Source of the DNA: Podarcis bocagei
Lineage: Eukaryota
DNA: 64,000 nt
Assembly: GCA_964188305.1 (NCBI GenBank)
Contig: OZ076888.1
Direction: 5' to 3' (one strand)
In this document: positions 16,796 to 51,892 of the stretch, in pieces
How positions within the stretch are numbered: position 1 is the first letter of the stretch
Layout of the letters: each line of letters begins with the position of its first letter
Position numbers and translations under genes: made by a program
The notes under the pieces: model-generated
The model's input: only the letters and a program-made list of their open reading frames with translations
Told to the model about the DNA's origin: nothing
Database searches by the model: none

Positions 16796-17037
16796 CAGTG
16801 GTACCTCGGATTAAGTACAGTGGTACCTCGGGTTAAGTATTTAATTCGTTCCAGAGGTCTGTTCTTAACCTGAAACTGTTCTTAACCTTAAGCACCACTA
16901 ATGAGGCCTCCTGCTGCTGCCGCGCCGCCAGAGCACGATTTCTGTTCTCATCCTGAAGCAAAGTTCTTAACCCAAGGTACTATTTCTGGGTTACCAGGGT
17001 CTGTAACCTGAAGCGTATGTAACCTGAGGTACCACTG
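16796..17037. mobile_element. Tc1/mariner-superfamily (Tigger-like) MITE with duplicated left terminus
   Basis: TIR CAGTGGTACCTC / GAGGTACCACTG flanked by TA; the first 22 bp occur twice in tandem (16796 and 16818). Confidence 0.88.
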
Positions 17038-17371
17038 TACGTATAATTTCAGAATTCTTAGCTGCATATTACGAGAGACCTGGGGAATACCAACCCGGGT
17101 TCTGCAGAAAGGGGACTTCTGAGCCCGCGACTTTTACACGGACACATAATGGATTCTGTGCACACTGGAACACATAGGTATACATTCTTGTGTCTTTTTA
17201 GGCCCTGAAGACGCCATGTCAGTAAAAAGTGACATATGGCCTGGCCCCGAAAGAGGATTTGTTTGCGTGAGCCCTGGTTCAAAAGATGATTTCTGGACAT
17301 TATGCGATCAAAGCAGCACCTGCAGAACGAAAAAGTTAATGAAAAGAAGAAAGCGGGGAAAGGAAACTAAC

Positions 17372-17570
17372 CTCGGGTGCATCCTGGGGTTTCTGTGCAT
17401 TGTCTTTTTCTTTCTTGCTCTTTTGGTGTTCATTTCTGATGCGTTTTGTTCCAGACAATTTTATCTTACTTTCCCCCTCCTGGGCGACATTATCTTGTTT
17501 TCGAGGTTTCACAGGAGGCAGTGGCTTATCTTCTTCTCCTTTAATAAATCTCTCATACGGCAGGATTAAT
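17372..17570 (-). CDS. ARID5B: ARID5B exon 9 equivalent (end of ARID domain; LILPYERFIKGEEDKPLPPVKPRKQ...KPQDAPE), 199 nt
   Basis: Acceptor TTCTTTAG|ATTAATC at 17570 and donor GAG|GTTAGT at 17372; phase 2 in, phase 0 out. Translation read by hand; not in the ORF track. Confidence 0.96.
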
Positions 17571-18794
17571 CTAAAGAACGAATAATTGATCAGTTCTAGA
17601 AGTTCTCACCCAAAAGACCAAAATAAAATAAATGGCTGTAAGAAGTTCATTGTTAAAAACTGTTTTTTGAAAGAAAGAAAAAACCACTCAAAACTAGAAG
17701 TCAAAGATGTGCAGTAGGATTTGGAAGCTGTTTCTTCTTCTCAAACTGCTGCTGAATCAAATTATTTCCTCTGCCTTTCACACATTTTGCAACCACAAAG
17801 CTGAGTTTGCCAACCTCTCAGATGATACACACTTTCCTAAACATCTGTAATATTCACACTTTACATGTTTAGCTATACAATGTGTCTTTATGTGTAAACC
17901 TAAAAAATGGAATGGTTCTGATCCACTTCAATTTATTTGTGACCAAGTCCTATTGAAACTTACAGGTTAGCTGATACTAAATTAAGTCACATAAATTCAA
18001 TTTAATCTGCACTCCAATTCACACTTTCCTGGAAGTCGGTCTCATTAAAGTTACTTCTGAGTACACACCTAAAGGATTGCAGTGTTAGCCATAAGTAACT
18101 TTAGCTGGATCAGGTCCAACAAGTGACAACAAGCAGAACATTTTTTTAAAAAATCCATTGAGATAAATGAGATTATGAAGCCAAATGGAATCGCTGGAGA
18201 TGAGCTACATATCTCCCCCACTACTTTAAATTGATCTTAATGGAAATACTTTGTATTTAGTTCTTTGGCCTGTTTAAACAGCAACCGACTTGAGTTACAG
18301 AACTTCCCGACAGCAGTGCCATATATACCCTGAAAGTACAGAAGTACAGAAAATAGCAAATAATCCCAACTGGAACCTCAGGGTGGATTGCGGTGTGAAC
18401 AGGTCTTAAGGAACCTCACATGGGTCAGTTCAGGTCTTGGGTCTGAAGTCCTTAAATCTGCCTCCAAAACAGTGCAGACTAGACATGCTAGCTCCCTTCC
18501 AACCATTGTCTCTAGATGCCTCTTGCCTTCTCTTCTCTGCAATCCCCAGAGGGCTTTCCCATAACTATTTGGATTCTCAGAGCTACCTGCGTAAGTCAGA
18601 AGCTAGAGGAGCAGAGTGCAATGGGAAGGGGTGAAGACAAAACTCAGCCCAGCAGGGTTGCACATATAATCCCAGAAGCTGGGGAGGAGGGATGTGGCCC
18701 CTCCACCACCAAACATCAGCATATTCTGGACTGTATCATCTTGTATCCTCTATCCTGTGGGCTAGATATGGTTCCATCAGAAGATGGAAGCAGT

Positions 18795-18885
18795 CTTCTC
18801 CAACCTGTTTTGCCCTCCATATGTTGTTGGACTACAGCTCTTATCATGCCTGGCCCCTGTGGCTGATGGGAACTGTAGTCCAACT
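18795..18885. mobile_element. Degenerate hAT MITE fragment
   Basis: GCCCTCCATATGTTGTTGGACTACAGCTC...GGGAACTGTAGTCCAAC resembles the 41019 element. Confidence 0.55.
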
Positions 18886-21207
18886 GGTATAGAAACCTTG
18901 TACTAGCATAGATTTCCTCCTCTTCTTTTTTAGGAATCTGGGGGAATGTCATAAGGGCCCATTTTGTGAGCAAGAAGATTCCTCTTTCTCTAGGGAAAGG
19001 GGGGAAAGGGCAAGCAGTGTCTACCAGGTGGTAGTTGGCACAGTGGGCAGGAACAAAAACGATTTTAAGAGACAATTAGAGAATTTTAATTACAGAGTTT
19101 TGTCTTTCAAACCATGGAAAAATTGCTTGGGGGAGGAGACAGAGATGCTTCAATCTGATTCCCACCACCCCTCCACAGAGTGCCTCTTGAAATGAGGGTA
19201 AATAAGCAGTGTTATTAAAAAGAATGGATTGGCTTACAATCTGAGTTTCAGCTCCAGTGATTAAAGTTCTTATAATGCATTAAACATGATTAATGAATGA
19301 CTCATAGCAGGAATAATGCATGACTCCGACTTTTAAAAATATGAACTTTAGTATGGCAAACATTTTTTTTTAAAAAAAAAACCCACAATAGGTATCTGTT
19401 GAAGAAAATGGACGTTGCTTTTTAAACAGCATTAATCTGTTCAAATATCAGACTTCTTTAATTATAGCTTAATCTAAGAGTTCAAGATAGAAAACTCTTT
19501 TTGTTCAGGCACAGATTTTTTTTGTTATTCCAGAATCAGCTCCAAGCCATCCAGTTTTAATTTAGATGTTCAAACACAGTTTGGCTTCAAGAGAGCTGGG
19601 ATTAGCTTGCTTGCGATGATAGTATTTCACATTTTAATAAAATACAACATAAATTATGTTAAAAAGTAAACCTCATTTATGCCATATTAGAAACAAAATT
19701 CATGAACTGAGCATGCTCTGACATGGGTATGTGCAGAGAGGCGTGAATAATACTTTTGAGCCCTGAATTTGGCAGCTGGCCAGTAATGAAGCTAAAGCAA
19801 TGCCCAAGGGGAATGCTGGTCCTCAGATCCCATTACAAACTGAGTTTAAACATGTTACAGCTGCTAAAACTGAAAACAGCTCTCTCTATGCAGGCTTAGC
19901 AAAATAATACGGACTTTGCCAAATACTTGCTTCCCACTGTAACATTACGGTTAATGTTTATGTAATAAAAAAAGAAGCATAACAAGGCAGAATAAAAAAA
20001 AAAGGGGGGGGAGAGAAAGAAATACAATCTTGTTCATACTTGAGGCTGCTAAATTTCATTTGTAACAAGCACAAAATATTCAAGGCACCCTTGAACATCT
20101 TTTCCCGTGCCTGGGACTTGAAGCAAGAGGAGGCGAGGTTGGGTTTCATCCAGAGCAATATTTATATCTTTTTCTGCCATGTGTTAAATATTTAAAGAAT
20201 CAGATTTAACCAAAATACTTTTTTTTTTTTTGGTGGCAATAGTTGTTAACACTGCAGAAAGGATTGTTTGACTTTGTTTGGTTGCCATGGGAACAGGCAG
20301 CCCATTTGAAATCTACATGTTTCGTTGGTAAATGTTTCAAAAGCTGCTCATAGCTTTAAAATTAGAGGATGATACTCTGCCACCACTAGGCCTTTTAAAT
20401 AAAATATTCTGTGTGATTATCCTGGCGGTTAAAGCAGAAACGGGACAAAGGCCAGCCCTGATAAGATTAATCACTGTTAGCACTCTTTCTGAGAAACCCT
20501 TTTGTGTCAGTTTTAAATTTGACCACCAAAAAGACAACAGCTTCCTGCCTCTTTGTTGCCATATAAATCCCTGGAACTCATTAGGTCAGAGGATAATTAG
20601 GAGTCATGGCTGATGAGAGTTCAACGTTACAGGAGGACGGGCCTGCTGTTTCCATTTTTGTGATTTTGTTTTTTTTCACTGAGCTCAGCAGTTGGCAGAG
20701 GCTACAGTGGCAAAAATACATTTCACATAGCTGGTCAAATGCCTAGCGCCAACAGCAGGAAATTTGGAATTAAATGTTTCTTGTATCTGGAGAGAGGCAT
20801 GACTAAGGTAAAAATTGAATCAAAACACAAGGACGGCTTGTTCTACTTGCATCAGCTCCCCACCCTGGACAGAAAATTCTAATGCAATGCTATTTCTCTA
20901 CAGTAACGAGGTGGGGTTGTTGGTTTCCGGTTTTTTTAAGCAAAGTAAAAAAAAAAAAGCAGAGAACTTAGGAGGATTAAAATGAAGCCTAACGCTATGA
21001 ACAATTGCAAGTTGACAGAGGTTTCCATTTGCTAGAATTTTCACTCTGTGGTCCCCCACCCTTCCTTGCCTTCAGTTGCCCTGTCACGGTACAACACAAT
21101 TACCCGCAGGATGTGATCTTATCATTTGATTATTAGAAGCTGTTATAGTACAAGGGAAATAAAGCTGGTGGAACATTCAAAGCTTCAGCTAACATACTAT
21201 TAGAACA

Positions 21208-21208
<1 letters not shown>

Positions 21209-21243
<35 letters not shown>
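21209..21243. repeat. (CA)n microsatellite
   Basis: Direct read. Confidence 0.97.
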
Positions 21244-21245
<2 letters not shown>

Positions 21246-25469: not shown

Positions 25470-26118
25470 GCCTCCATCTGCACTATATGTATAAAGCAGT
25501 ATCATGCCACTTCCCCCAAAGACTCCTGGGTACTGTGGTTTTTTAAGGGTGCTGAGGGTTGTGAGGCCACCTATGCACCTCACAATGCTACAATTCCCAT
25601 AGTTCCCTGGGAAAGGGGACTGAGTGTCAAAAAACACTGGGAACTGTAGCTCTGTGGGGAGAACAGGGGTCTCCTAAATACCCGTAACAGACTACAGTTC
25701 CCAGAATTCTTTGGGGGAAGTCATGACTATTTAAAGTGGGATAGCTGTGGTCTAAACCGCAGAGCCTAGGGCTTGCCGATCAGAAGGTTGGTGGTTCGAA
25801 TCCCTGCGACGGGGTGAGCTTCCATTGCTCGGTCCCTGCTCTTGCCCACATAGCAGTTCGAAAGCACGTCAAAGTGCAAGTAGATAAATAGGTACCACTC
25901 CGGCGGGACGGTAAACGGTGTTTCCGTGTGCTGCTCTGGTTTGCCAGAAACGGCTTGGTCATACTGGCCACATGACCTGGAAGCTGTACACTGGCTCCCT
26001 TGGCCAGTAAAGCAAGATGAGCACTGCAACCCTAGAGTCGTTCGAGACTGGACCTAATGGTCAGGGGTCCCTTTACTTTTACCTAACACTGCTTGACATG
26101 TATAGTGCAGATGAAGCC
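25470..26118. mobile_element. MITE-like host element interrupted by the Sauria SINE
   Basis: Inverted ends CATCTGCACTATA (25475-25487) / TATAGTGCAGATG (26101-26113); internal GGGAACTGTAGCTCTGTG / CTACAGTTCCC motifs shared with the hairpin at 1831. Confidence 0.65.
25744..26084 (+). mobile_element. Sauria SINE, slightly 5'-truncated, nested in a MITE-like element
   Basis: B-box GGTTCGAATCC, body matching other copies, GGGGTCCCTTTACTTTTACC tail. Confidence 0.9.
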
Positions 26119-29100: not shown

Positions 29101-30419
29101 TCATATTATCAGGATGGGGATATTGGAATATGAGATGTGTTTTTCCCCCTCATGAAATAATCTTACAAGCACTTCAGCTGGACATTTTTTTGTTCCGTAA
29201 AAGCAAGCATTTGAACTGTTCAGATACATTACAAATGACTGATTTAAGACCAAGACAGGATCCATAGTTTTTAAGGAGCATGAAGACCCAGCAGCCCTAA
29301 GGCTGCAGAAAGGCCTCTGACTTGTTCTCTAAAGTATCAGGTTACATTTTAAAATATAATAAACCTCTTGCTGTTATGGCTGTGGAATGAGGCCTTTTAA
29401 ACCAAGAAATCAGTGTAACCAATAAAAAGGACCATCTGTCTGAGAATGCAGGGAGTCTGTAACAATAGCTTTAAGGTGTCAAGTGCCCCATTCATTTCAA
29501 TAGACTCTAATCCAGATGCCTATGATATTTTAAATGTCAACATTGTTAACTGACATCGCTGCTTATTAGAGCATGTAAGAAAGGAAAATAACCACCCCAA
29601 TGTGAATGACTCTTCCAACTTGTCCCAAAGTGGAAGAAATTTCACAAAGCACTAGAGGAGATGAGAGGAAGAGAATTTTGATAGCATGGAAAGAGATAAT
29701 ATTCAAAGGTACCAGTTTCTCTCTCTCTCTTTCTTTCTTTCTCTCTCTCTCTCCCCCCCTCCCCTTATGGGATGGATGGATGGGCTGCATGAGATGAAAA
29801 ATACTTTATTGTCCTGTAAAAAAAAAAAGACTTAGCAGAGCTTGTGTTTCCCAAGTTTGGGGGATTGAAGTATAGTGAAGAAACCGGAAAGAAAGGTTGT
29901 CTAAATTTAGGCAAATAAGATAATGTATTAACCATCAACCAAAAACACCCACCCACACCCAGAAGTCATCTTAAAACTTTACTGTGGAAAAATTGAATGC
30001 AGACAACCAAGAAATTCTCTTATGAAATTATAGGGGAAACCAAGGCTAACAAGGCTCCTTTATGAGTTTGGGTTAGAAAATACATCAGACTGACAGAACC
30101 AAGACTTCATGGTCTTTGCTGACATGGACTTTTTTTAAAAAAAAGAGAGCTGAAATTGTATTTTTTTTTAAAAAAGTGTTGTCTAGAAACAAACAAACAA
30201 ACAAACAAACAAACAATAAAGTTTCAAAAAACACTCCTCAGAATTTGGGTCTGCAAATTATTATTGCTATTAGAATTTGTATACAGCTCTATACTCGCAT
30301 GTTCTCTGAATATTGAAATGCTTATCAAATATCTGATATTTGTATTTTATGTCCTATGGTATTTGATTTCAGTATAATACATTTGAGTCTGAGATTTTAT
30401 TTCAATCTTTCAAATTTGA

Positions 30420-33381: not shown

Positions 33382-33456
33382 TATAACCTTAATGTGTAGT
33401 CTTTTTCCTTTTTAATTGCATTTTGTTTAGGAAATGTGAGGTCACAAACACATCAT

Positions 33457-33458
<2 letters not shown>

Positions 33459-33506
<48 letters not shown>
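33459..33506. repeat. (AG)n microsatellite
   Basis: Direct read. Confidence 0.97.
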
Positions 33507-33509
<3 letters not shown>

Positions 33510-33882
33510 CCTAACAAAAACCACAACTTCCTGCTCATTTACAGCATCATGGCTATTTACTCAGGGAAATAAAAATCATCCATTGCGTATTTTGTGCAGG
33601 GGTAAAAAACAAACAAACAAACCCCTGACTCACTTTAACTGGCACTGAGTGAAAACTGCATCTGATCTGATATCAATATCCTTAGAACACATTGCAAATA
33701 ACATGGTTCTATGAGAAAACTAACCATTTTCAATTATTTCTAAATCCTAGATGACCTAACATAGAAATGCAGGATCCTGACAGCGCACAAATCAGAAATC
33801 CAGGTTTGTGTTTTTGCAGTACTAAAGTCAGGCCATGCTGTCTTTACTTTATGTGATCAGCCACTGTAATTCTACAAGAACT

Positions 33883-34231
33883 GTAAAGGTACCCCTGCCC
33901 GTACAGGCCAGTCGTGTCCGACTCTAGGGTTGTGTGCCCATCTCACTTAAGAGGCCGGGGGCCAGCGCTGTCCGGAGACACTTCCGGGTCACGTGGCCAG
34001 CGTGACAAAGCTGCATCTGGCGAGCCAGCGCAGCACACGGAAACGCCGTTTACCTTCCCGCCAGTAAGCGGTCCCTATTTATCTACTTGCACCCGGGGGT
34101 GCTTTCGAACTGCTAGGTTGGCAGGCGCTGGGACCGAGCAGCGGGAGCTCACCCCGCCACAGGGATTCGAACCGCCGACCTTTCGATCGGCAAGCCCTAG
34201 GCGCTGAGGCTTTTACCCACAGCGCCACCCG
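33883..34231 (-). mobile_element. Sauria SINE, near full length
   Basis: Reverse complement of the 45331 element; same subfamily diagnostic (GGTACCCCTGCCCGTAC). Confidence 0.92.
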
Positions 34232-34293
34232 TAGCCTCCTGATAAAATAATAACAACTTGCACACTTTGTATGTGTTGAGTCACGTACATAGC

Positions 34294-34440
34294 NNNNNNN
34301 NNNNNNNNNNNNNNNNNNNNNNNNNNNNNNNNNNNNNNNNNNNNNNNNNNNNNNNNNNNNNNNNNNNNNNNNNNNNNNNNNNNNNNNNNNNNNNNNNNNN
34401 NNNNNNNNNNNNNNNNNNNNNNNNNNNNNNNNNNNNNNNN
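34294..34440. other. Assembly gap (147 N) in intron 8
   Basis: Run of N. Confidence 1.
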
Positions 34441-34796: not shown

Positions 34797-35132
34797 AAGG
34801 TAAAGGTAAAGATACCCCTGCCCGTACGGGCCAGTCGTGTCTGACTCTAGGGTTGTGCGCTCATCTCGCTCAAGAGGCTGGGAGCCAGCGCTGTCCGCAG
34901 ACACTTCCGGGTCACGTGGCCAGCGTGACAAAGCTGCTCTGGCGAGCCAGCACCAGAGCAGCACACGGAAACGCCGTTTACCTTCCCGCTATAAAGCGGT
35001 CCCTATTTATCTACTTGCACTTGGGGGTGCTTTCGAACTGCTAGGTGGGCAGGAGCTGGGACCGAACGACGGGAGCTCACCCCGCCGCAGTCCTAGGCAC
35101 TGAGGTTTTACCCACAGCGCCACCCGCGTCCC
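34797..35132 (-). mobile_element. Sauria SINE with internal deletion of the B-box region
   Basis: (AAAGGT)n tail, head ...CACCCGCGTCCC; TSD AAATCATGCTTA at 34785-34796 and 35137-35148; lacks the GGATTCGAACC...GGCAAG segment present in the 33883 copy. Confidence 0.92.
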
Positions 35133-35311
35133 TTTTAAATCATGCTTAGCCCTTCTTTATTTGAAAGGGGGAACACACACTGATTTTTGAAAGGGGAGCC
35201 CCCAGAGAGCGCTTTTTCATGTCAGACCATCTTCCCTGTCACTGTCATTTTCTACTAGTAGCAGCTCTTCAGCATCTCAGGCAGACATCTTTCCTGGTCC
35301 TGACACCTGAC

Positions 35312-37982: not shown

Positions 37983-38080
37983 CTTTCATAATGTCTACGA
38001 GTACACGTGGCTGCACTTGTGCTCCCAGGGTTACCACCTAATTCATCATAAATATGTTTCCATTGTCGGCGGGCTGTTAT
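37983..38080 (-). CDS. ARID5B: ARID5B exon 8 equivalent (ARID domain; ITARRQWKHIYDELGGNPGSTSAATCTRRHYER), 98 nt
   Basis: Acceptor TTTTACAG|ATA at 38080, donor AAG|GTAAGA at 37983; classic ARID5-family helix sequence. Confidence 0.97.
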
Positions 38081-41018
38081 CTGTAAAAGTGGCAATGGAA
38101 AATTTAATCTTGCATCTTTACAGATATTTGTGTGTGTGCAGCGTTTGAATTCACAGCAACAAATGTATATGTGAGACATTTAGAACGCCATGTACTACAA
38201 GCATTGTTAAATCCCCTGTAGAACGGATTGAATATGTATCTATGGCTCTTTTAAAAGCAAAAGAGAGAGAGACATTTTTCACATTTGCTTCACATAAACC
38301 TTTCTCTCTTTTTTGTACAATTGGGTTTTACTGCTGTCTCATTATCAAGCAATTTTGCTATTTTGTGTGTACGATTTCTTGAAAAGGAACTTCAATCAAT
38401 TGAGGGCCATTAAGCATCAAAATGTATGCAGACAAATCCCTTGGTAAATTATGAAAATGAATCTCAAACTAAGCACAAATAATGATTACATAGTTATTTT
38501 AACTGAGTTAGTGAAAATGAATCCATTGCAAACCCTTAATCCATCACAGGCTCCCCTAAATCCACATAGACTCACAGCCTGTAACTCTATATGTTACAAG
38601 CTGTTTATTTTCATCCGTCTGCGTCAGTAAAATATATAGTTCAAATGGTAGTGAAATCTAAACACTATCCAATGTTAATATCTGAGTTATTTGGCTAAAT
38701 GGAAGAAAATAAACATCTTATAAAATATTAACTTGCAAGTTATGTTTTTTTGGTGGGGAGGAACGTTGCACAGAAAAATGGGGCCAAAAGAATAATAGAT
38801 ACAAGACCTGGCAAAATAATTGTTCTGAATTCCACTTCATTATTTTCTATAGTCTTAACAGGAAGAAAAACAGGAACCTGAGAGGCAAAGCATGGTAATA
38901 GTCAACCTTTTTCTGCATGCAATTTAAAAAGTGGGGGCATGTTGTGGGAAATTGCTTGGAAAAGATGTTTTAAAAATAAATTCTGAGTGAATTTTGTCAT
39001 TTTTGTGGAATGCTGTGGTGCTTAATAGAGAGTCCCACAGAATTCTTTACAGTTACCCACAGTGCTGCTGATGAAGTTCACTAAGGAGCCAAAGGCAGCA
39101 ATCAAAAGAAAACAAATATCAAAACTTGCAATCTGGGGGCCTGTAATTTTAATCTTAAAAAGAGCAGATGAGTGGAGCAGTTAAATATTATAGGGTAAAT
39201 GATGCTTTTCCTGCTCTGCATAAAGATAAAATGCTTCCTTTTCAGAAACCCAGCTTCAAAGGCAAAAGACATGTTATTTGGTAATGTTATAATTTCAGAG
39301 AAACATCCTTGAAGCTTATCTTTGTTTTGTTCTCATTAGACATAACCACCGCCTACTTCTAGATGCCGATTAAATCAAAAATGCCTATTTGTTCATCAGT
39401 AGTATGAAATAACCTAAAACCTTGATAAAACTGTCTTCTGTGTGGGGAAATTAAATATTCAGTTACAACTTATCTGCAAAGCTGTTTTGGGTTTTTTTCC
39501 AACTTAAAGGACTGTAGAAATGGCATGTACACACACCCGGATCCCACGATCCTCCCTCCACACGCTGTGGGGATATTGTGTGCAAAGAAACAAGGGCTCC
39601 TGGCGCACAATATCCCACCAGATCTAGAGTGCATGGGGCAAAACTGGCAAATCCAGGACACCCATATGGGGAGGTGCACACAAGATGGCTGATCTACAGA
39701 CCCATTTCTGCACACAGCACAGACAGAAATGGGCACAGTGGCGCAACAGGGCAGATTAGCCAAGAGGCAGGCATGGAACAAGAACATTGTGTTTTGATTA
39801 TCCCTGGAGGTTGAAATTGCTCTTGCAGTAGGTACGAGAAAGTGTTCATTCAAGCCCACTATGGCTCAGAGAAATGAAGTGACAAGGAAGTCAGTATCAA
39901 CCCGTCTTGGATTCTGTGCCAAGCGTGACTAGTTTTGAAGATCAAGGTGGAAAATGGCTGTTTGGTTGGTCTCACTGCACTTATTCGGTTAAAAGTGAAT
40001 AACCCGAATGTAAATGCACACTTTTAACAGAATGGATGCTCCTCTCCCCCATCTGTGAGCATTAAAATTTAAGGTGTGGAAATGATTAATAGAACACTTC
40101 TCTCTTTTTTTTTTACTAATTCAGATTCAGTTTCTCTTGGCAGTCCTGCCTGCTCTGAAATCAATAGGCCAGCACCACTTATTTACCATAGTGATTATGC
40201 TAAGTTATGCTGACGTGGTGATGAAAGACCCAGTTCCTGGAAGTCTTGACACCATGCCTTATTTAAATTTTTTAAAAATAAGGCCTAACGCCCGATGTCA
40301 TAATCTTCTTAAAGGATATGAACGAAGCAAACTTTTTTTCTGGAAAGTTCAGAAATCCCTGACACCATTATATTTAGGGCATGATTGCTCACAAATCGAC
40401 ACTAGATTCTCCTTCCATTAGCAGCCTTTTAACAAAGTCTTTCCCCCATTTTTCCTTTGTGCTAGTGCGATATGGGGAGCAGACATACCGTCAGGATCCC
40501 TACCGCTGCCCCCTGCTGCTCTCCGACTATTCTGTATTCCACTCCAAACTAACACAGTGCAACTCTACAAGTCAAATTCAGTCCACTAGCCAAGTAGAGC
40601 ATCACACCAGGGGCTCAGTGAGCTTACTGCTTTGCCGCTTGTCTGGCAAAAACATGGACTGCCTCAAACACCTGGCAGGCCAAGCTACTAATACTTGACA
40701 AGCTCCATTTGGTTTGGTGGGCCACAAGTTTTGCTCAGCTGTTCTATACAAATTTCACTTTCATACTGGAAAATGCAGTATGCTTCCAACTGTTGTTTAA
40801 AGTTTGGACAACTTATTGCTAGATAAAAGTGTCATTTTCCTTCTATCGTAAAAGGCTTCTTCAGTGCAATCTTTGCTCGAAGCTGCAATGGAAATGCCAA
40901 GCTCATATTCTGTCTTCCCATATTAATACAGACAGTAACCCATTCATTGCAATGTTATTGCAATGTTTCCCTGTTTCCACTGCAACGATCACCAAAGAAC
41001 AGTGAACTTTATCTAGGT

Positions 41019-41129
41019 CAGGCATGGCCAAACTTGGCCCTCCCGATGTTTTGAGACCACTGGTCGTTAGCTAGGATGATGCGAGCTGTAGTCCCAAAAC
41101 ATCTGGAGGGCCAAGTTTGGCCGTGCCTG
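41019..41129. mobile_element. 111-bp hAT-superfamily MITE (fold-back)
   Basis: Long TIR CAGGCATGGCCAAACTTGGCCCTCC / GGAGGGCCAAGTTTGGCCGTGCCTG; perfect 8-bp TSD ATCTAGGT. Confidence 0.92.
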
Positions 41130-41334
41130 ATCTAGGTGATCAATATTCTCCCCATGGTTAAATTTAAGTAATTAAAGTGTGCCTTCTGGAAACCTGGTCT
41201 TAAAAGACTATAAAGAGAACACCACCTGTAATGTTCATTTTTGATATTTGATTCAAGACAATCTGTTCTAATTCATGTGTGTCCCTCTGTTTCTGCTTAA
41301 AGGTGCAACAATATTTGCACATGGTATCTGCAGC

Positions 41335-43437: not shown

Positions 43438-43945
43438 CAATATTTTTCGCTCTATAGAACACACCCGACCATAGGACACACCTTGTTTTAGAGGGGGAGA
43501 ACAAGAAAAAGAAAATCTCCCCTTCTCTGCGCAGCGCCCCTTCAGCGAAGCAGCAGGAGAAATGGAGCCCCTTCCATTTCTCCTCCCACTTAGCTGAAGG
43601 GGCGCTGCGCCTTAGCTGAAGGGGCACCTACCCTTCAGTGAAAGGAACCCGAAGCCTCCGGAGCGCAGCGGGAGCTCCCGCTGCACTCCGGAGACTTCAG
43701 GCGGCTATCTTTGAAGCCTGGAGAGCGAGAGGGGTCAGTGCGCACTGACCCCTCTCGCTTTCCAGGTTTCAGCAAAAGCAACGCGAAGCCTCCGGAGCAC
43801 GGCGGGAGCGCTCCCACTGCACTTCGGAGGCTTTGCATTGCTATCACTGAAGCCAAGGAGCCTGCATTCGCTCCATAAGACGCACACACATTTCCCCTTA
43901 ATTTTTGGAGGGGAAAATGTGTGTCTTATAGAGTGAAAAATACGG
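43438..43945. mobile_element. Tc1/mariner (pogo-like) non-autonomous element with GC-rich internal palindromes
   Basis: Imperfect TIRs CAATATTTTTCGCTCTATAGAACAC / GTGTCTTATAGAGTGAAAAATACGG; TA at the left flank. Confidence 0.8.
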
Positions 43946-45330
43946 AATATCAACCAACCAACCAAACAAATGTGGGGTGTGAATTAGGAGTATATGAGTA
44001 CCAATGCAAATCTGCCACTTGGATCTCTATTAGGTGCATGCTGAAGTGTATCCAACACTTCTTATCTGAATTATGCTGGAAACTAATGGGCTGCACATGC
44101 ACTAGGTTTTCAGAGGCACCCTTTCAAACTAGGAACACCTTCTGTCCCACTGAAAAGCTGTTGCTGACAGTAGGAGTGCCGCAAAACAGAAGGGAAAATA
44201 TGGGCATCAGAATCTTGTTCAATCTGTGTATATGCAGGAGTGGTGCTAGTATCAGCATCCTGTATCCTCTGCCTCATCATTCCTGCTCAGATCAGGGAAG
44301 CTTTCTCGTGTGCTTGCTTTAGTTGAATTGTTTGCAGCAGAACACGAACTGCTTGCTGGCTGGGCAGACAGCCCCTTAAGCTTAGTTTGGTCAAAGTGAT
44401 GAAAGCTTAAATCAGAACTGCTAAATCCTGCGCATTATGAAATCTCAATTTGTAAGTTTCACTCTACTGGAAAGAAGAATGGCTCAAAGGTTGTAACATG
44501 GTGTGAAAAATACAATGAATGTGGCATTTAAGGAGAAAACGATAGTTTTACATTGGATAAGCATGATGAAGGTTAACAAGTTATGCAACATCTGGGAAGA
44601 GGGTTTATACAAATATTTTTAGCCATTTTAATAGACTAAGGCAGAAATCCTTTCAGGGAGAAAGTTGCATTGAATACATTACGTAAGATGGCACCCCAAA
44701 TGGCCAGATTGTTAGAAATAACTTCAAAGGCTATCTTGACTTCTCTTCGTCACTACTCCATATTTTATCTTAGTTTGCTGCTGTTTTTTGTGTGTAAACT
44801 ACCCACTTATTTGAATATAAAATCTGGAACAATGTAAGGGCCAAGATTTAAGGCGTGTCATTAACTTGATGGCTCCAACTTAACAGACTTGCCTAATTTC
44901 ACTTTCTAATAGCATTTGCCCAGAAGTGTTGGAGAAAGGCAAATAAAATTTCCTTCTCATGAGCTTCCAGCTAATGCATATGTTACTTTAAACCACAAGA
45001 GAGCACTGCTTCTCTAGCAATCTAGCCAACACTTGTTTGTAACTCTCTGTCTAAGTTAACTCCAACCCTAAAAGCTGAGCCATTTTTCTCTCTCCCTACT
45101 TGTTGAGAAAATATGTCTTCTATTCTCTCTCATCTCTACTGTAAATAGTTCCTGCATGAATAAAGCCTCTGAACACCAAAAACTGTAACAGAAGCGGAAC
45201 TTTCCAAAGGTTAGCACATTGGAATCATATACATCCTTACTTCAAAGCAAAACTCAAAGAATACTTTTAATGCTTGTATTATCAGCTGATTGGCTAGACT
45301 TTTTTTTAGCCTTCCTTAGTGCTTAAATGA

Positions 45331-45690
45331 GGGACGCGGGTGGCGCTGTGGGTAAAACCTCAGCGCCTAGGACTTGCCGATCGCATGGTCGGTGGTTCGA
45401 ATCCCCGCGGTGGGGTGCGCTCCCGTCGTTTGGTCCCAGCGCCTGCCAACCTAGCAGTTCGAAAGCACCTCCGGGTGCAAGTAGATAAATAGGGACCGCT
45501 TACCAGCGGGAAGGTAAACGGCGTTCCCTGTGCTGCGCTGGCTCACCAGATGCAGCTTTGTCACGCTGGCCACGTGACCTGGAAGTGTCTGCGGACAGCG
45601 CTGGCTCCCGGCCTATAGAGTGAGATGAGTGCACAACCCTAGAGTCTGGCAAGACTGGCCCGTACGGGCAGAGGTACCTTTACCTTTACC
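45331..45690 (+). mobile_element. Full-length Sauria SINE (Squam1-type), ...CCCGTACGGGCAG... subfamily
   Basis: tRNA-like head GGGACGCGGGTGGCGCTGTGG, B-box GGTTCGAATCC, (ACCTTT)n tail; TSD TAGTGCTTAAAT(G/A)A at 45317-45330 and 45691-45704. Confidence 0.93.
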
Positions 45691-46886
45691 TAGTGCTTAA
45701 ATAAGAAGTTCTGCTTTAGTTTTATTATTGTTGTTTTAGTATATTTAGTTTTTGATGTTTTCTGTACATTGCTCAGAGAACAACAGCTATTTGGTGTACC
45801 CAATGTAGTGAATAAATTTAAATAAATTAGAGTTGGGTTAACTCCCAAGTAAACAAGCACAGAATCAGGCACTCAGATCAGATGCAAACCAAAGAATGTC
45901 AACTAAAGCTACCAATACCTGTATGTGATTACTATTTCACAACCATAGATATGTTAGCTAACTGCACAGGCATTAAAATGACACAACAGGCTTTGTTCTA
46001 TGGGACAAATACCAGAGTGATTACATTTCAGCTTAAATTAATTTCAGCTTTTGTGTTCTCTGTTACTTCATTATGGAATAGATGCAGCCCAGATTTATAC
46101 TCAGTGAACAAAGCAAAACAAATAAATATATCTAGCTAGCTAGCTAGCTATTTAAATATGTTTTTTGCATTCAACTGTGGCAGGAAATGCACAACCTAAT
46201 CTGAGCATTATGGGCTGGGGAAATATTCCCAATGACGATCGTCTTATGTCAAATGGGCTTTATTGCAGATGCCATCTTTATATGCCATATTAAAGCAGCT
46301 CTTTCTTCTCGTTTCAAGATCTTAATCGCAGTTTGTTGCTCCAACGTTTTATTGGTTTGGAATACATGCTGTAAAATCCGCAACCATCAAATTTCCCTGT
46401 GAGCTAAAAATAAAGTGGCCATGTCAGATATGGTTAGTTGATAAAAAGTGTCAGAGTATTCTGCTTTCCCCCCCCCCCCCTTGCCTTTATACTTTGGATA
46501 ACTTCCTGTTTATGTGGCACTGACCCTTGTCTAATAAAGATCTTTTACTATTCACAGTAAAGAAAGATACTGCACCAAGCTATTCCTTAATGGACAACGC
46601 TGATTACTTTTGAAAGCATTTAATACATTTCCCATATTCCAACATGAACAGATGTCAGGGACTATGCCAAGTGAAATTTCATTTTATGCAATCTTGGCTT
46701 GTTGTACAAGAATAGCCCTTTCTCAACATGGGAAAAAATTACAGACCCAACCAATTTCCTTGACAGGGAAGAGTTACACATGTTTTCCACTCAAGAAGTG
46801 TTTTTTTTCTTCTTCAACAAGTTTACAGTTTTGCCAAACCTGGAACTAATTGGGGCTTTTTCTAAAAAAGGACCCAATAACCCCAC

Positions 46887-46909
46887 TGTGTGTGTGTGTG
46901 TGTGTGTGT
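46887..46909. repeat. (TG)n microsatellite, ~120 bp downstream of the exon 7 donor
   Basis: Direct read. Confidence 0.93.
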
Positions 46910-47030
46910 ACTACATTGTTATTTCCTGTGTGTGTCTATGTGTGTGTGTTTGAGAAAAAGAAACACCACCCCGAACAGGGGAAAGCTAGATTACACATTT
47001 TTTTCCCATTTAAGTTACTTAAACACTTAC

Positions 47031-47083
47031 TGTTTCATATCCTCCCAGTTTTTGAGCAGCTTGAAACATAGTCCAAAGGTTAA
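47031..47083 (-). CDS. ARID5B: ARID5B exon 7 equivalent (ARID domain; (I)NLWTMFQAAQKLGGYET), 53 nt
   Basis: Acceptor CTAACAG|TTAACC at 47083, donor ACA|GTAAGT at 47031; phase 1 in, phase 0 out, fitting both neighbours. Too short for the ORF track. Confidence 0.96.
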
Positions 47084-49048
47084 CTGTTAGAGGGACAATA
47101 AGTATTTAGATAAGCATTGCATTAACCAACTTTTTTCAAAGAAATGCAAATCAAACAGTTTTTCTTTCACAGTGAAGCAAGAAGATAACAATCACATCTA
47201 CGCACACAAAAAGGTTTTTTTTTTGGGGGGGGGGAGAAACACAAACAATCTGCGAATGACATTTACATAATTCAAAGAGTAAACATTGGCTTTGCACATA
47301 TACCATTCCTTTCTTAAAATCACAAGGGAAAACATTTCTCTGAGATACAGTTACAGATATAAAAGAATTTTTTTTTTTACTGAGCTTAAATTCACTTCCA
47401 GGATATAAAACAAACAGCATAAAAAACAAAACACACGAAATAAGCTTTGCATTATATGTTCCTATATAAAACTAACATAGTTATTAGAAAGAGCATTATT
47501 TTTAAAATGTCATTTAGTTAATGTAGCAGGAAACTGGAGTGCATATACAAAGCAGTCCTTGATTAAACAAGTATTTACTGCCACTCAGATAAGAGACCTT
47601 GGCTGGGATCCAGAGATCCTCTTCCACATGAGGAAACAAGCTTCTACAAGTGGAGCAGCTCATTTCATCATGAATGTAGCCTGCAGGGTGAGGAATATCA
47701 AGATGCACCCAGAGCGACCGTATCTCCCATACAACTGCACCCCAGCTTTCTCAGAGTCTAAACCATCTCAAGAGGTCTTGAGGTCTCACAGATCATGCAC
47801 TGTCTTATGTGGACCTCCCAAAAGTGTTAGCGCTCCCCAATAGCCAGGCGTGTTCCTTGCAAAGTCATGCTGCCCCTGCACTCATCTATGCAACTCTTGA
47901 AAGTAGGGGAAGCCCTATGGGGAACTTCCACTGGTGGGAACATTTATAGCCCCATGGTCCAGATCCCAGGCATGGGTGTCTTGTACATAACATCTGCCAC
48001 CAGGAGTGCGTTGCCTGTTTCCTGCTATCATCCCTATTTTGCAACTAGCATAAAATGCACAGCTGTCTCTGCACTGGTTGTTTCAAACCATCCCTGCTGT
48101 TGATTGGTGCCAAACTAAGCCTCTAATGGATCAAATTTGACTGACATGGTTAGATGGGATAGTTTGCAGAATTTTGGTTTACGCTGGCACAAACGTCCTG
48201 AAGCATCCAAAATACCAATGGTTGTGGACATTTCAGAATGCCTAACTAAAGCTTGGTCCACTACAGAGCTGGCAAAAATGAATATCTTTAACATTTGAGC
48301 TAAGGAAGGGTGCAAATTCCATCATTCCACATGAAGTGGATGCCATTTGCTGGCTGTTGAACTCATGTCAAAGAGCTTAGCTAGAGAGATAGACATAAAT
48401 CAATATATTTTGATGTGATTATACCTCCCTATATGATCATGACTTATTTTTAAATTGTCCGTATATCTGCACTTTAATCCAATTGTCTCTTTTAATAAAG
48501 GTTTCCTTTTAAGTTTAAAGGGGGAAAGGGGGCAAGCACTTTTAGAATCCTCTGTAATGAGAGAACTACAGAATGCAGTAAAATAGGTTCGACTGCATTT
48601 TTTTTCTCCCTTTACCCCATCAAAGAGCTTCTCATAATGGTGCTGTATGAATTGCCTCCAAAATATTACATAAATTATGGGTGTTCCCCAGGGAGTAGTA
48701 CTCATTATTGAACCACACAGCACAGCAAAGAACATTCACTGTACTTATTCAGCAACAGAGGAATTATATTATTTAAACTGGTTCTTCCTACTCATGTGTT
48801 TACACATGTCAAGGTAGACAAACACAGCGACTACTCCTGGCCATTATATGAGCAGCTCAGTTACTCCTGAGTAATCTTGCTCTGAGGAAACATGAGGCAC
48901 ATTGCTGAATATCAAACAAGTCAGTTTATCTCAGCTACATGTTGCAGAGTGATCTCATGGCAACGCTGGGAAATTGAGACCCAATAAATACCTGCTTTTA
49001 AAAATGTGCCTCTTTGTTAGTGACAAATAAGGGGGGGGGGGAATTAAC

Positions 49049-49051
<3 letters not shown>

Positions 49052-49091
<40 letters not shown>
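49052..49091. repeat. (AC)n microsatellite
   Basis: Direct read. Confidence 0.97.
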
Positions 49092-49093
<2 letters not shown>

Positions 49094-50422
49094 CATCTCA
49101 AAATGTTCTAAATAAAAAGCTTCACTGAACCTTGCACTCTCCCTGAGCTATCAAGAGCTTTGCTCGGGCCTTGATTTAATCGGAATCAAATGCATAATGC
49201 AACAAAGCTGTTCATAGTACATTAATTTTACTTCTATTTCAAGCAGCCGGTTTTTCAGGCAAACATTGTAATCATTTTGGAGTTATATAAGTTTATAATG
49301 ACTGCTAGAGGTCTGTTGCAATCAGTGTCAATTGCTATTAGGTATGTAAATTGTTATGTAAAACATAGAGGTTTGACATTCTTCATCAAAATAACATACA
49401 CATTTAATCTGGGAAGATAGGTTTGAGAAAGTCATATTTCCATGTAAGGCATTCCTCCCTTTATAATAATTTAGATACCTTATAGGCTATTAAAAGCACA
49501 CCTTTCATCGTTTGCGATGTTCATTCTTCCATGCTATAGAATGTTTATGCAAAATTTAATTACAGTTGCATGTTCTCTATCAATTGTTGCTTTTATAAGC
49601 ACTGACTCAAAAAGTGCTCTTTCCAAAGCAATCCTTAGCATTGTGCTATGATGTCTTTAAACAGATCTTGTCTATTTTTATACTCTGTGACCTCCTTCAC
49701 CTACTTTCTGGCCACCTTTAGATGCCTTCCTTTTATATCTGTGGGACTCCCCCCCCTGAAGGAACATCTGGGTACAATAAAAGTATGTCGTATTATTAAT
49801 TCAAGGGAAGACATTAGCTGCAGTATTTATCAAAAGGAGAGGGAGAGCAGGAACCTTTCTAAATATGCCAGGTTCTGATCGCAAGCAGTGTATTTTAAAA
49901 CTATAAATTTCCACCAGCAGTTGCCCAAAATGAGGAGAAACTGCAAGATAGGGGATGGAAAAATGTATTGGTGGATATAAACACAATGACAACAACTCTC
50001 GTTTCAAAGGTCCCAGTGTGCATGTATGTACGTATGTGTTTTCCTTTTTAAGGTTTTTACTGGCTGACATACAAAGATCTCCTCGTTGTGCCTATGGGAG
50101 CTTCGTCCCCCCCCCACACCTCCCAAATCCACACGGCAAACCACTTTGAAAACCGAGAAGACTTTTAAAAGTCATTTGCTTTATGGCATTGGTGGTGGGG
50201 TTTCTGCTCAAAGGGCAGGAGGGGAAATCTCAATGCCTATAAAGCTCTAGATCCTGACAATTAGTTTTATAGTAAATGTACAGTGCAAAAGAAGAGACAA
50301 AGAGAAAGCTAAAGAGGGCCATATCTGTCCACAAAGTTGTCCCACCTTATCAAGCCAAACAACCCCAGAAGCCAAACTGTTCTAAAATGTCAAACCAAAA
50401 ATGCAATGAAAATTCTACTTAC

Positions 50423-50627
50423 TCTGCTTAAAACCAAGGTAGGGTATTCGTTCAATTGGTGTTTTTCTTTCTTTCATATATTTATAAAGTGCCACAAGGA
50501 ATGCCTGTTCATCCGCTCTGCATTCTTCACCTACAGAAACCTTTGATTTATCCTCGCTTGAGCCCTTTTTACAGTTGCTGTTGTTATTTTTGGTTTTGTG
50601 CAAAGGCAATTTAGCCTCACATTTTAC
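50423..50627 (-). CDS. ARID5B: ARID5B exon 6 equivalent (start of ARID domain; VKCEAK...RADEQAFLVALYKYMKERKTPIERIPYLGFKQ), 205 nt
   Basis: Acceptor TTCTTCCAG|GTA at 50627, donor CAGA|GTAAGT at 50423; ARID5 signature RADEQAFLVALYKYMKERKTPIERIP. Confidence 0.97.
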
Positions 50628-51040
50628 CTGGAAGAAAAGAGGAGATGCCAGATTAGATCTTGAAAACTGCCTGCTCCAGCTTTCATTCCCATTTAAGAGA
50701 TGACCCCCTTCTGCTCCATCACGCCTTCTCTTTCTCAGAAGGCCAACAACAACATTAAAGCTCTTTCTCTGTGTTTTAGGTACAATATTTCCAAACTGTT
50801 GCATCTCGATTTCCCTACTTCCTTTGCCTCTCATTCTTGCCTCCACTCTGTGTTTGTTTAATTCTTTGGACAAGTCAAGAACCTAAAGAGAACACGAAGC
50901 CGTGTCTTCTCTCCTTTAAGTTACTGCTCTGTGGTTTCCTGGCCCAACCTCATGCCATTTGCTTTTTGAGTCTTCCCTGTTGTATCTAGGTCTCCACTGC
51001 AGCCTGCCGGATCCCTAATGCTGCTTACCCCTCCCTTATA

Positions 51041-51892
51041 CAGTGGTACCTCGGGTTACATATGCTTCAGGTTACATACGCTTCAGGTTAAAGACTCCGC
51101 TAACCCAGAAATAGTGCTTCAGGTTAAGAACTTTGCTTCAGGATGAGAACAGAAATCGTGCTCCAGTGGCACGGCAGCAACAGGAGGCCCCATTAGCTAA
51201 AGTGGTGCTTCAAAAAAAGGATAGAACTTTCATTATGTACGCTACAACAGCAGCAAGAATACTTATTGCAAAGTATTGGAAGATGCAAGACTTGCCCACT
51301 TTGGAAGAATGGCAGATGAAGCTGATTGACTGTATGGGACTAGCAGAAATGACTGGCAGAATCCGTGACCAGGGAGAAGAGTCAGCAGAAGAAGATTGGA
51401 AAAAATTCAAGGACTATTTACAAAAATACTGTAAAATTAAGGAATGTTGAATGATGTTGGATTGAAATTAAGTGGTTTCTAGCTGTAATGGTACAAAGGA
51501 ATATGATAAAATGGTTTTCTTTTTATAAGTAAGAATTTAAGGTTATCATAACCTAAGATGTTGGAGAGAAAATAAGGTGTTTTCTTGGTTTTTTTTCTTT
51601 TAAGCTGTAATGCTTTGAGATATGGATTTGCTGCACAAATAATTTGAACTGGATATACAAGAAGGGGAGGTATGAGGAGGTCAGGGAAATATGTTATGAG
51701 AAAATAAGTTGTGAAATTTATGTGTTTTTAACTTTTTTATGTTTGCTTTTTTCTTTTTGTTTGTAAAAAATTGGAAACTTTAATAAATATCTTTTTTTTA
51801 AAAAAGCTAAAGTGGTGCTTCAGGTTAAGAACAGTTTCAGGTTAAGTACGGACCTCCGGAACAAATTAAGTACTTAACCCGAGGTACCACTG
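51041..51892. mobile_element. Same Tc1/mariner MITE family, opposite orientation, interrupted by an L1 fragment
   Basis: TA-CAGTGGTACCTCGGGTTA ... TAACCCGAGGTACCACTG-TA; the two halves rejoin across the TSD AGCTAAAGTGGTGCTTCA. Confidence 0.9.
51213..51804 (+). mobile_element. 5'-truncated L1-clade LINE (ORF2 C-terminus, 3'UTR and decayed A tail)
   Basis: Open frame ...YATTAARILIAKYWK...PTLEEW...DWKKFKDYL...* (stop 51450) typical of non-mammalian L1 ORF2 ends; T-rich 3'UTR; AATAAA 51782-51787; 18-bp TSD at 51195-51212 and 51805-51822. Confidence 0.88.

What the first reader, a model, noticed from the sequence alone, without database searches (positions are those of the whole stretch)
16796..51212. 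Inverted MITE pair brackets ARID5B exons 6-9: predicted 555-nt stop-free ARID-domain circRNA and in-frame ARID-less skip product
Seen: two copies of one Tc1/mariner MITE family lie in opposite orientation, one ending 335 bp past the exon 9 donor (16796-17037) and one starting 414 bp before the exon 6 acceptor (51041-51212). Their exon-proximal ~170 bp are reverse-complementary, including a perfect 42-bp match (16931-16972 vs 51122-51163). Exons 6+7+8+9 = 205+53+98+199 = 555 nt, start and end in phase 0, and encode the whole ARID domain. Known: reverse-complementary intronic repeats near splice sites (e.g. inverted Alus in primates) promote back-splicing and exon skipping. Inference: a lizard-specific circRNA with junction GAG|GTA would have a continuous 185-codon frame with internal ATGs (YKYMK, WTMF) and no stop, so it could in principle be translated as tandem ARID repeats. 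The linear by-product (exon 5 to 10) would be an in-frame ARID5B lacking DNA binding. Caveat: this MITE is probably high-copy, so the placement may be chance, and the loop is ~34 kb.
Basis: partly seen in the sequence, partly recalled or inferred. Interest (0 to 1): 0.72.

Follow-up and report, generated by a model that had tools for sequence, protein, structure and literature searches.

The report
Inverted transposon pair around ARID5B exons
Two old copies of a small jumping element sit in opposite orientation on either side of the four exons that encode the DNA-binding domain of a wall lizard's ARID5B gene. They could in principle help make a circular RNA, but nothing available here shows that it exists, and such layouts are common in this genome.

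Summary
The gene on the minus strand is ARID5B of a Podarcis wall lizard. Exons 6-9 are 205+53+98+199 = 555 nt, phase 0 to 0, and hold the whole ARID domain. Two TA-flanked MITE copies lie inverted, 335 nt past the exon 9 donor and 414 nt before the exon 6 acceptor, with a perfect 42-bp complementary core. The N gap lies in intron 8 and touches no exon.

The interpretation, a circular RNA plus an exon 5-to-10 skip product, could not be tested.

Indirect evidence does not favour it:
- No exon 5-to-10 isoform is annotated in any lacertid or among the best 120 relatives.
- The annotated ARID-region variants skip other exons (6+7, or 6 and 8), and the 6+7 skip also occurs in birds and turtles.
- Longer SINE pairs bracket other exon sets, and 4 of 10 intron pairs in this gene hold an inverted repeat pair.
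- The intact MITE copy folds stably on itself.

First readers flagged at least seven like predictions at other genes of this genome. The mechanism is a known kind. Most likely these are neutral insertions giving at most a rare by-product. Interest is low.

The parts
16796..17039 (-). MITE copy 1 in intron 9. It is complete and TA-flanked, with terminal inverted repeats starting CAGTGGTACCTCGG. Its left terminus is duplicated over 22 bp (16796-17 and 16818-39). It ends 335 nt downstream of the exon 9 donor.
51039..51212 (-). MITE copy 2, exon-proximal part, in intron 5. It is inverted relative to copy 1 and starts 414 nt upstream of the exon 6 acceptor.
51824..51895 (-). MITE copy 2, distal part, including the other terminal inverted repeat and its TA. 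It was separated from the proximal part by the L1 insertion.
   Evidence: (pair I9)
51213..51823 (+). 5'-truncated L1-like insertion inside MITE copy 2. It has the end of an ORF2-like frame, AATAAA and a poly-A tail. The second copy of its 17-bp target duplication GCTAAAGTGGTGCTTCA is 51807-51823; the first copy is 51196-51212.
   Evidence: read from the sequence. The L1 assignment rests on the recalled look of the ORF2 end and was not tested by a family search.
50423..50627 (-). ARID5B exon 6 (205 nt, starts in phase 0). It holds the start of the ARID domain and the in-frame ATG of YKYMK at 50477.
47031..47083 (-). ARID5B exon 7 (53 nt). It holds the in-frame ATG of WTMF at 47069. An alternative acceptor 24 nt inside it (exon then starts at 47059) is used by the annotated 1172-aa isoform.
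37983..38080 (-). ARID5B exon 8 (98 nt).
17372..17570 (-). ARID5B exon 9 (199 nt, ends in phase 0). It holds the end of the ARID domain.
60838..60950 (-). ARID5B exon 5 (113 nt, ends in phase 0 with GCC AAG).
9556..11697 (-). ARID5B exon 10 coding part (713 codons plus stop, starts in phase 0 with GCA TCA TCG).
34294..34440 (.). Assembly gap (147 N) inside intron 8, in no exon. It was not filled.
45323..45691 (.). SINE-like repeat in intron 7. It is reverse-complementary to copies in intron 8 (33883-34231 at 90.5%, 34798-35138 at 82%) and in intron 5 (58659-59016 at 76%). These competing pairs bracket exon 8 and exons 6-7.
58659..59002 (.). SINE-like repeat in intron 5. It is reverse-complementary to 25744-26087 in intron 8 (344 bp, 86%). 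This competing pair brackets exons 6-8.

Best explanation
The stretch holds exons 5-10 of ARID5B in a Podarcis wall lizard. Two copies of one TA-flanked, Tc1/mariner-type non-coding transposon (MITE) inserted independently into introns 5 and 9 and happen to lie in opposite orientation. One of them was later split by an L1 fragment.

In the pre-mRNA the two exon-proximal arms could form a duplex of about 170 bp that brings the exon 9 donor next to the exon 6 acceptor. That is the known layout for repeat-assisted back-splicing.

The most likely reading is that these are neutral intronic insertions. If a 555-nt exon 6-9 circle or an exon 5-to-10 mRNA is made at all, it is a rare by-product with no role of its own and is not translated.

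Shown here: gene, exons, frames, repeats and their pairing potential. Inferred: everything about RNA products.
For: **Identity and anatomy**
- 99% identity to Podarcis ARID5B.
- the pair is real.
- The copies are 89-93% alike, with many CpG-type differences, and one carries a later L1 insertion. They are therefore old.

**Against a special role**
- 4 of the 10 intron pairs among introns 5-9 hold an inverted repeat pair of 80 bp or more.
- The longest pairs (about 350-bp SINE-like repeats, up to 90.5%) bracket exon 8, exons 6-8 or exons 6-7, not exons 6-9.
- Copy 1 folds on itself at -90.7 kcal/mol, z = -5.2. The partner arm is transcribed about 34 kb earlier.
- No exon 5-to-10 isoform appears among annotated ARID5B proteins of Podarcis muralis, P. 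lilfordi, P. raffonei, Lacerta agilis or Zootoca vivipara, or among the 120 best relatives.
- The ARID-region variants that are annotated are an exon 6+7 skip, a model skipping exons 6 and 8, and an alternative acceptor in exon 7. The 6+7 skip is also annotated in chicken, crane and tortoise.
- First readers flagged at least seven analogous layouts elsewhere in this genome.
- No paper in the library names an ARID5B circular RNA.
Against: - The arms are unusually well placed, 335 and 414 nt from the two splice sites that would be joined. A random pair in this gene would do as well 0.24% of the time.
- They are each other's only partners in the window.
- The computed inter-arm duplex (-259 kcal/mol) is far more stable than the two self-folds together (-41 and -91).
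- Short repeats near splice sites are known to suffice for circularisation in minigenes. This rests on my recall of Liang and Wilusz 2014 and was not read here.
- Annotation pipelines do not record circular RNAs and often miss rare skip isoforms, so their silence is weak evidence.
- No RNA reads were examined.
Confidence: 0.7

Rival explanations
1. One reading: the MITE pair pairs in the pre-mRNA and drives a measurable exon 6-9 circular RNA (555 nt), together with an in-frame exon 5-to-10 mRNA that encodes ARID5B without its DNA-binding domain.
For: - Complementary arms of about 170 nt with a 42-bp perfect core lie close to the right splice sites.
- It is the only intron 5 x intron 9 pair.
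- The duplex is predicted to be strong.
- Splice sites are canonical and frames are correct.
- The mechanism is established for inverted repeats in mammals and maize (PMC6888579).
Against:
- No annotated exon 5-to-10 isoform.
- Longer competing SINE pairs exist.
- The MITE folds on itself.
- The loop is about 34 kb with four internal introns, so intron 5 would have to stay unspliced for a long time (inference).
Confidence: 0.2
2. If circular or skip products arise from the ARID region, they follow the exon sets already seen to be skipped. The main case is exons 6+7 (258 nt, also phase 0 to 0, stop-free and holding both ATGs), by lariat-driven or SINE-assisted back-splicing, independently of the MITE pair.
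For: - An exact exon 6+7 deletion (86 residues) is annotated in a P. muralis model (P0126), chicken X2, Grus americana X3 and Gopherus flavomarginatus X2.
- A P. muralis model (P0125) skips exons 6 and 8.
- SINE-like pairs bracket exons 6-7 and exon 8 in this window.
Against: - These are gene models whose RNA support cannot be seen here.
- No circular product has been shown.
- The intron 5 x intron 7 pair is only 76% alike.
- Birds and turtles presumably lack these lizard SINE insertions, so repeats are not needed for the skip.
Confidence: 0.25
3. The circle exists and is translated round and round from an internal ATG into tandem ARID domains that compete with ARID5B on DNA.
For: - The 185-codon frame has no stop.
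- In-frame ATGs lie at 50477 and 47069.
- Rolling-circle translation of stop-free circular RNAs is documented for a few endogenous cases (PMC11263353).
Against: - The circle itself is unproven.
- The ATG contexts are weak to moderate (aaatatATGa, tggactATGt).
- There is no evidence of an internal ribosome entry element.
- Any block of coding exons whose length is a multiple of three is stop-free, so the property is not special.
Confidence: 0.02

Closest known systems
Inverted-repeat (reverse-complementary match) assisted exon circularisation, for example inverted Alu pairs in primates and LINE1-like reverse-complementary pairs in maize
   Same: Two copies of one transposon family lie in opposite orientation in the introns flanking a block of internal exons, close to the splice sites that would be joined. 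Other repeat pairs in the same gene offer competing pairings (PMC6888579).
   Different: - The repeats are a TA-flanked MITE that also folds on itself through its own terminal inverted repeats.
- One arm is cut short by an L1 insertion.
- The host is a lizard.
- No circular RNA has been observed for this locus.
Stop-free circular RNAs translated by the rolling-circle route (circEGFR, circ-E-Cad, the tau 12-to-7 circle, artificial endless-ORF circles)
   Same: The predicted circle has a length divisible by three, no in-frame stop and internal ATGs (PMC11263353).
   Different: Existence, ribosome loading and product are all untested here.
Annotated in-frame exon 6+7 skip of ARID5B in sauropsids
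   Same: It is an in-frame removal of ARID-domain exons, starting from the same exon 5 donor.
   Different: It removes 86 residues (the first half of the domain) and joins exon 5 to exon 8, not to exon 10. It occurs in birds and turtles, so it does not depend on this lizard MITE pair.
Tc1/mariner-type MITEs of wall lizards
   Same: TA target duplication, terminal inverted repeats beginning CAGTG, about 240 bp, and no coding capacity.
   Different: Family assignment rests on the ends alone. No parent transposase element was identified and the genome copy number was not measured.

Membership tests
ARID5B (AT-rich interaction domain 5B) gene | ARID DNA-binding domain matching the solved ARID5B/MRF-2 domain | tested here: met
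   Exon 6, 8 and 9 pieces match PDB 1IG6/2OEH residues 1-32 and 51-82 (identical) and 84-107 (23 of 24). Pfam ARID gives partial hits on single exons.
ARID5B (AT-rich interaction domain 5B) gene | Long C-terminal exon orthologous to named ARID5B proteins | tested here: met
   The exon 10 translation is 99% identical to ARID5B of Podarcis lilfordi, P. muralis and P. raffonei.
Repeat-flanked circular-RNA locus | Reverse-complementary repeats in both flanking introns | tested here: met
   130 nt at 89% plus 44 nt at 91%, with a 42-bp perfect core. It is the only intron 5 x intron 9 pair.
Repeat-flanked circular-RNA locus | Canonical downstream donor and upstream acceptor available for back-splicing | tested here: met
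   Exon 9 donor GAG|gttagt and exon 6 acceptor ttccag|GTA.
Repeat-flanked circular-RNA locus | Back-splice junction reads or RNase R-resistant product | not testable with these tools
The runs listed are mostly contigs or ordinary RNA-Seq.
Repeat-flanked circular-RNA locus | Matching linear skip isoform (exon 5 to 10) | tested here: not met
   None appears among the 120 best ARID5B relatives or the lacertid cluster members. A fragment search with the start of exon 10 was blank. This is weak negative evidence.
Rolling-circle translated circular RNA | Length divisible by three, no in-frame stop, in-frame start codon | tested here: met
   555 nt and 185 codons, checked exon by exon, with ATGs at 50477 and 47069.
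Rolling-circle translated circular RNA | Ribosome association or multimeric protein product | not testable with these tools
   No ribosome profiling or proteome data are available here.
Tc1/mariner-type MITE | TA target-site duplication and terminal inverted repeats on a short non-coding element | tested here: met
   Both copies are flanked by TA. Termini read CAGTGGTACCTCGG... and ...GAGGTACCACTG, and the element is about 240 bp.
Tc1/mariner-type MITE | Many copies in the genome and a related autonomous element | not tested
   There are only two copies in this window. Earlier notes say MITEs are abundant in this genome, unchecked.

The most novel reading that the evidence does not exclude
A lacertid-specific circular RNA of ARID5B exons 6-9 that depends on the MITE pair. 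It would be translated as an endless frame into tandem ARID domains, or paired with an ARID-less linear isoform. Either would act as a competitor or dominant negative of a conserved chromatin regulator, a case of a transposon pair creating a new regulatory product.
Probability: 0.02. Interest if true: 0.7.

Novelty: new member of a known kind. Interest (0 to 1): 0.2.

Why it matters
If the circle existed and depended on the arms, it would be a clean natural example outside mammals and plants of a DNA-transposon pair creating a lineage-specific circular RNA from a conserved DNA-binding domain. Related lizards lacking an arm would serve as natural controls.

As it stands it is an untested prediction of a well-known mechanism, in a genome where such repeat layouts are frequent. 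The more useful by-product is the catalogue of annotated ARID-region splice variants: the exon 6+7 skip shared with birds and turtles, a model skipping exons 6 and 8, and an alternative acceptor in exon 7. These show where alternative splicing of this domain is actually recorded.

Tried and rejected
1. **Reads.** I asked read laying for window:11590-17585 with two raw-read RNA runs and two contig runs, to count exon 9-10 joints and loose ends at the exon 9 donor and exon 10 acceptor.
2. **Other lacertid genomes.** I looked up the full-length P. muralis protein by its database id. The gene range is 175 kb, so no DNA was returned. The short isoforms of P. muralis, L. agilis and P. lilfordi are not on record. 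The age and species range of the two insertions therefore remain unknown.
3. **Fragment search.** A word search with the first 150 residues of exon 10, meant to find transcript fragments showing what precedes exon 10, found nothing. This is uninformative.
4. **Literature.** No paper names an ARID5B circular RNA. Searches for lizard or Podarcis circular RNA found nothing relevant. The only published ARID5B skip found is human exon 4 (PMC4307332).
5. **Earlier findings.** Look-ups by sequence and by combined words were blank.
6. **tRNA scan.** A scan of the SINE-like repeats found no tRNA-like head. 'SINE' therefore rests on length, copy pattern and a recalled Sauria-SINE tail motif only.
7. **Joined exon model.** The joined exon 6-9 sequence was never built for, or sent to, any search tool. 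Frames were checked exon by exon.
8. **Gap.** The N gap was not filled or looked up.
9. **Rejected idea.** The stop-free frame is not itself evidence. Any run of coding exons with total length divisible by three has it, and exons 6+7 (258 nt) and 8+9 (297 nt) do too.


Full report
**What is there.** The minus strand of the window carries exons 5-10 of ARID5B.

Translations of exons 6, 8 and 9 match the solved ARID domain of ARID5B/MRF-2 (PDB 1IG6/2OEH). Chain residues 1-32 equal exon 6 residues 37-68 and chain residues 51-82 equal exon 8, both identical; chain residues 84-107 match exon 9 residues 1-24 at 23 of 24. Exon 7 was too short to search. With the split codon its translation has the right length for chain residues 33-50, so the whole domain lies in exons 6-9.

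The 713-codon last exon is 99% identical to ARID5B of Podarcis lilfordi, P. muralis and P. raffonei. It is 97-98% identical to Lacerta agilis and Zootoca vivipara. The window is therefore from a Podarcis wall lizard.

**Exon structure (sequence).**

| Exon | Coordinates | Length |
|---|---|---|
| 5 | 60950-60838 | 113 nt |
| 6 | 50627-50423 | 205 nt |
| 7 | 47083-47031 | 53 nt |
| 8 | 38080-37983 | 98 nt |
| 9 | 17570-17372 | 199 nt |
| 10 | from 11697, stop ending at 9556 | 713 codons |

- All exons have AG/GT borders.
- Exon 6 starts on a codon boundary and leaves one base, which with TT of exon 7 gives ATT.
- Exon 7 ends on a boundary. Exon 8 leaves AG, which with A of exon 9 gives AGA. Exon 9 ends on a boundary.
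- There are no stops. So 555 nt equals 185 codons, the circle junction would read GAG|GTA, and exon 5 to exon 10 (AAG|GCA) is in frame.
- In-frame ATGs lie at 50477 (context aaatatATGa) and 47069 (tggactATGt).

**The gap.** The only N run, 34294-34440, lies in intron 8. It is 3.5 kb from exon 8 and 16.7 kb from exon 9, in non-repetitive-looking intron sequence between two SINE-like copies. It affects no exon or frame. It makes the length of intron 8 and the loop of about 34 kb an estimate, and it could hide another repeat. I did not fill it or look it up.

**The repeat pair.**
- Copy 1 (16796-17039) is a complete element of about 240 bp. It is flanked by TA, with termini CAGTGGTACCTCGG... and ...GAGGTACCACTG, and a 22-bp duplication of its left end.
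- Copy 2 begins at 51039 and runs to 51212. There it is interrupted by a 5'-truncated L1-like fragment on the plus strand (end of an ORF2-like frame, AATAAA, poly-A) with a 17-bp target duplication.
- The rest of copy 2 follows at 51824-51895 and ends with TA.
- The copies are inverted. Complementarity is 130 nt at 89% plus 44 nt at 91% for the exon-proximal arms and 85 nt at 93% for the distal part.
- The perfect 42-bp match is confirmed.
- Arm 1 ends 335 nt downstream of the exon 9 donor. Arm 2 starts 414 nt upstream of the exon 6 acceptor.
- There are no other copies of this family in the window.

The one addition is that copy 2 is a whole element split by an L1 fragment.

**Pairing potential.**
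- As RNA, the two arms would form a duplex computed at -259 kcal/mol. The upstream arm alone folds at -41 and copy 1 alone at -91.
- Copy 1 alone forms a long hairpin through its own inverted ends (-90.7 kcal/mol, z = -5.2 against shuffles).
- Thermodynamics favour the long-range duplex.
- Kinetics do not (inference). Arm 2 is transcribed about 34 kb before arm 1, each element can close on itself first, and intron 5 would have to stay unspliced meanwhile.

**Is the layout special?**
- Within this gene, four of the ten pairs among introns 5-9 contain a reverse-complementary repeat pair of 80 bp or more.
- The strongest pairs are SINE-like repeats of about 350 bp:

| Pair | Length and identity | Exons bracketed |
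|---|---|---|
| intron 7 x intron 8 | 349 bp, 90.5% | exon 8 |
| intron 5 x intron 8 | 344 bp, 86% | exons 6-8 |
| intron 5 x intron 7 | 365 bp, 76% | exons 6-7 |

- The MITE pair is the only intron 5 x intron 9 pair, and its arms have no other partner.
- A simple placement model for two copies in the 51.6 kb of intron gives these fractions:

| Layout | Fraction |
|---|---|
| Inverted, in different introns | 0.38 |
| Also bracketing an in-frame exon block | 0.08 |
| Inverted in different introns, both arms this close to the bracketing sites | 0.0024 |
| All conditions together | 0.0006 |

- That proximity is the one locally unusual feature. The case was chosen after the fact from a scan of a repeat-rich genome.
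- First readers had already flagged at least seven analogous 'inverted pair brackets exons' predictions at other genes (MXI1, ATGL, CDKAL1, PHF20, DCP1A, FKBP6 and one more). None showed a follow-up.

**RNA evidence.** The look-up of sequencing runs listed fourteen RNA-like contig runs holding about the exonic share of the probe, and four raw-read RNA runs of the same species label.

My single read-laying run (window:11590-17585) was designed to show exon 9-10 joints and loose ends at the exon 9 donor and exon 10 acceptor. No read-level test was therefore possible.

**Indirect evidence from annotation.**
- Among the 120 best relatives of exon 10 and the members of the lacertid clusters, lizard ARID5B products are 1180, 1172, 1094, 1079, 991, 967 and 937 residues long.
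- None is the 995-residue ARID-less exon 5-to-10 product.
- The 1172-residue isoform (P. muralis, P. raffonei, L. agilis) uses an acceptor 24 nt inside exon 7 and loses INLWTMFQ.
- The 1094-residue P. muralis model lacks exactly residues 283-368, that is exons 6+7.
- The 1079-residue P. muralis model joins exon 5 to 7 to 9. It reads exon 7 out of frame and returns to frame in exon 9.
- The same exon 6+7 deletion is annotated in chicken X2, Grus americana X3 and Gopherus flavomarginatus X2. This skip therefore predates, and does not need, the lizard MITE pair.
- These are gene models whose RNA support I cannot see. Annotation does not record circles, so this is weak evidence. It points to other exon sets than the one predicted.
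- A fragment search with the start of exon 10 was blank.
- DNA of other lacertids could not be fetched.

**Comparison with what is known.**
- Circularisation assisted by reverse-complementary transposon copies in flanking introns, with competition among alternative pairings, is established for Alu pairs in humans and LINE1-like pairs in maize (PMC6888579).
- Rolling-circle translation of stop-free circles is documented for a handful of endogenous RNAs (PMC11263353).
- No paper in the library names an ARID5B circular RNA. The only published ARID5B skip found is human exon 4 (PMC4307332).
- The locus meets the structural criteria of a repeat-flanked circle locus. The defining criterion, a back-splice product, is untested, and the expected linear partner is not annotated.

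**Verdict.**
The interpretation cannot be decided.
- Best reading (about 0.7): two old, neutral MITE insertions in chance inverted orientation, giving at most a rare, functionless by-product.
- Pair-driven measurable circle and skip: about 0.2.
- Translated ARID concatemer: about 0.02.
- If ARID-region circles exist, an exon 6+7 circle (258 nt, equally stop-free) is at least as likely, given the annotated skip.
- Novelty: at best a new member of a known kind. Interest is low, 0.2.

Noticed in passing
window 47031-50627 (exons 6 and 7); proteins P0126, P0087, P0066, P0029: An exact in-frame skip of exons 6+7 (86 residues, the first half of the ARID domain) is annotated in a Podarcis muralis model, chicken X2, Grus americana X3 and Gopherus flavomarginatus X2. 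It looks like an old, shared ARID5B variant. Exons 6+7 are 258 nt, also stop-free as a circle.
   Followed up: partly
protein P0125 (P. muralis, 1079 aa); window exons 6-9: This model joins exon 5 to 7 to 9, skipping exons 6 and 8. Exon 7 is read out of frame (LTFGLCFKLLKNWEDMKQ) and the frame is restored in exon 9. Its RNA support is unknown.
   Followed up: partly
window 47059-47083: An alternative acceptor (tttcaag|CT) 24 nt inside exon 7 gives the annotated 1172-aa isoform of P. muralis, P. raffonei and Lacerta agilis. That isoform loses INLWTMFQ from the ARID domain.
   Followed up: partly
window 51196-51823: A 5'-truncated L1-like fragment (plus strand, antisense to the gene) is inserted into MITE copy 2, with a 17-bp target duplication GCTAAAGTGGTGCTTCA. 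It dates the MITE as older than this L1 event.
   Followed up: partly
window 16796-16839: The left terminus of MITE copy 1 is duplicated in tandem: TACAGTGGTACCTCGGATTAAG, then TACAGTGGTACCTCGGGTTAAG.
   Followed up: no
window 25744-26087, 33883-34231, 34798-35138, 45323-45691, 58659-59016: Five copies of a SINE-like repeat of about 350 bp lie in two orientations across introns 5, 7 and 8. They form the longest inverted pairs in the gene. The tail resembles the Sauria SINE from memory, and no tRNA-like head was found by ARAGORN.
   Followed up: partly
window 41013-41135 and 43529-43854: Several near-palindromic foldback repeats lie in intron 7 (54-68-nt arms, 79-87% complementary, little or no spacer). 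They are probably other MITE-like elements.
   Followed up: no
window 29707-29769 and 33454-33512: A CT-rich tract and an (AG)24 microsatellite lie 3.7 kb apart in intron 8. They show up as a spurious inverted pair.
   Followed up: no
window 62301-62410: An earlier first-reader note on this window describes a uORF-rich leader of the short ARID5B isoform. The 937-aa short isoform is annotated in Podarcis, Lacerta and Zootoca.
   Followed up: no
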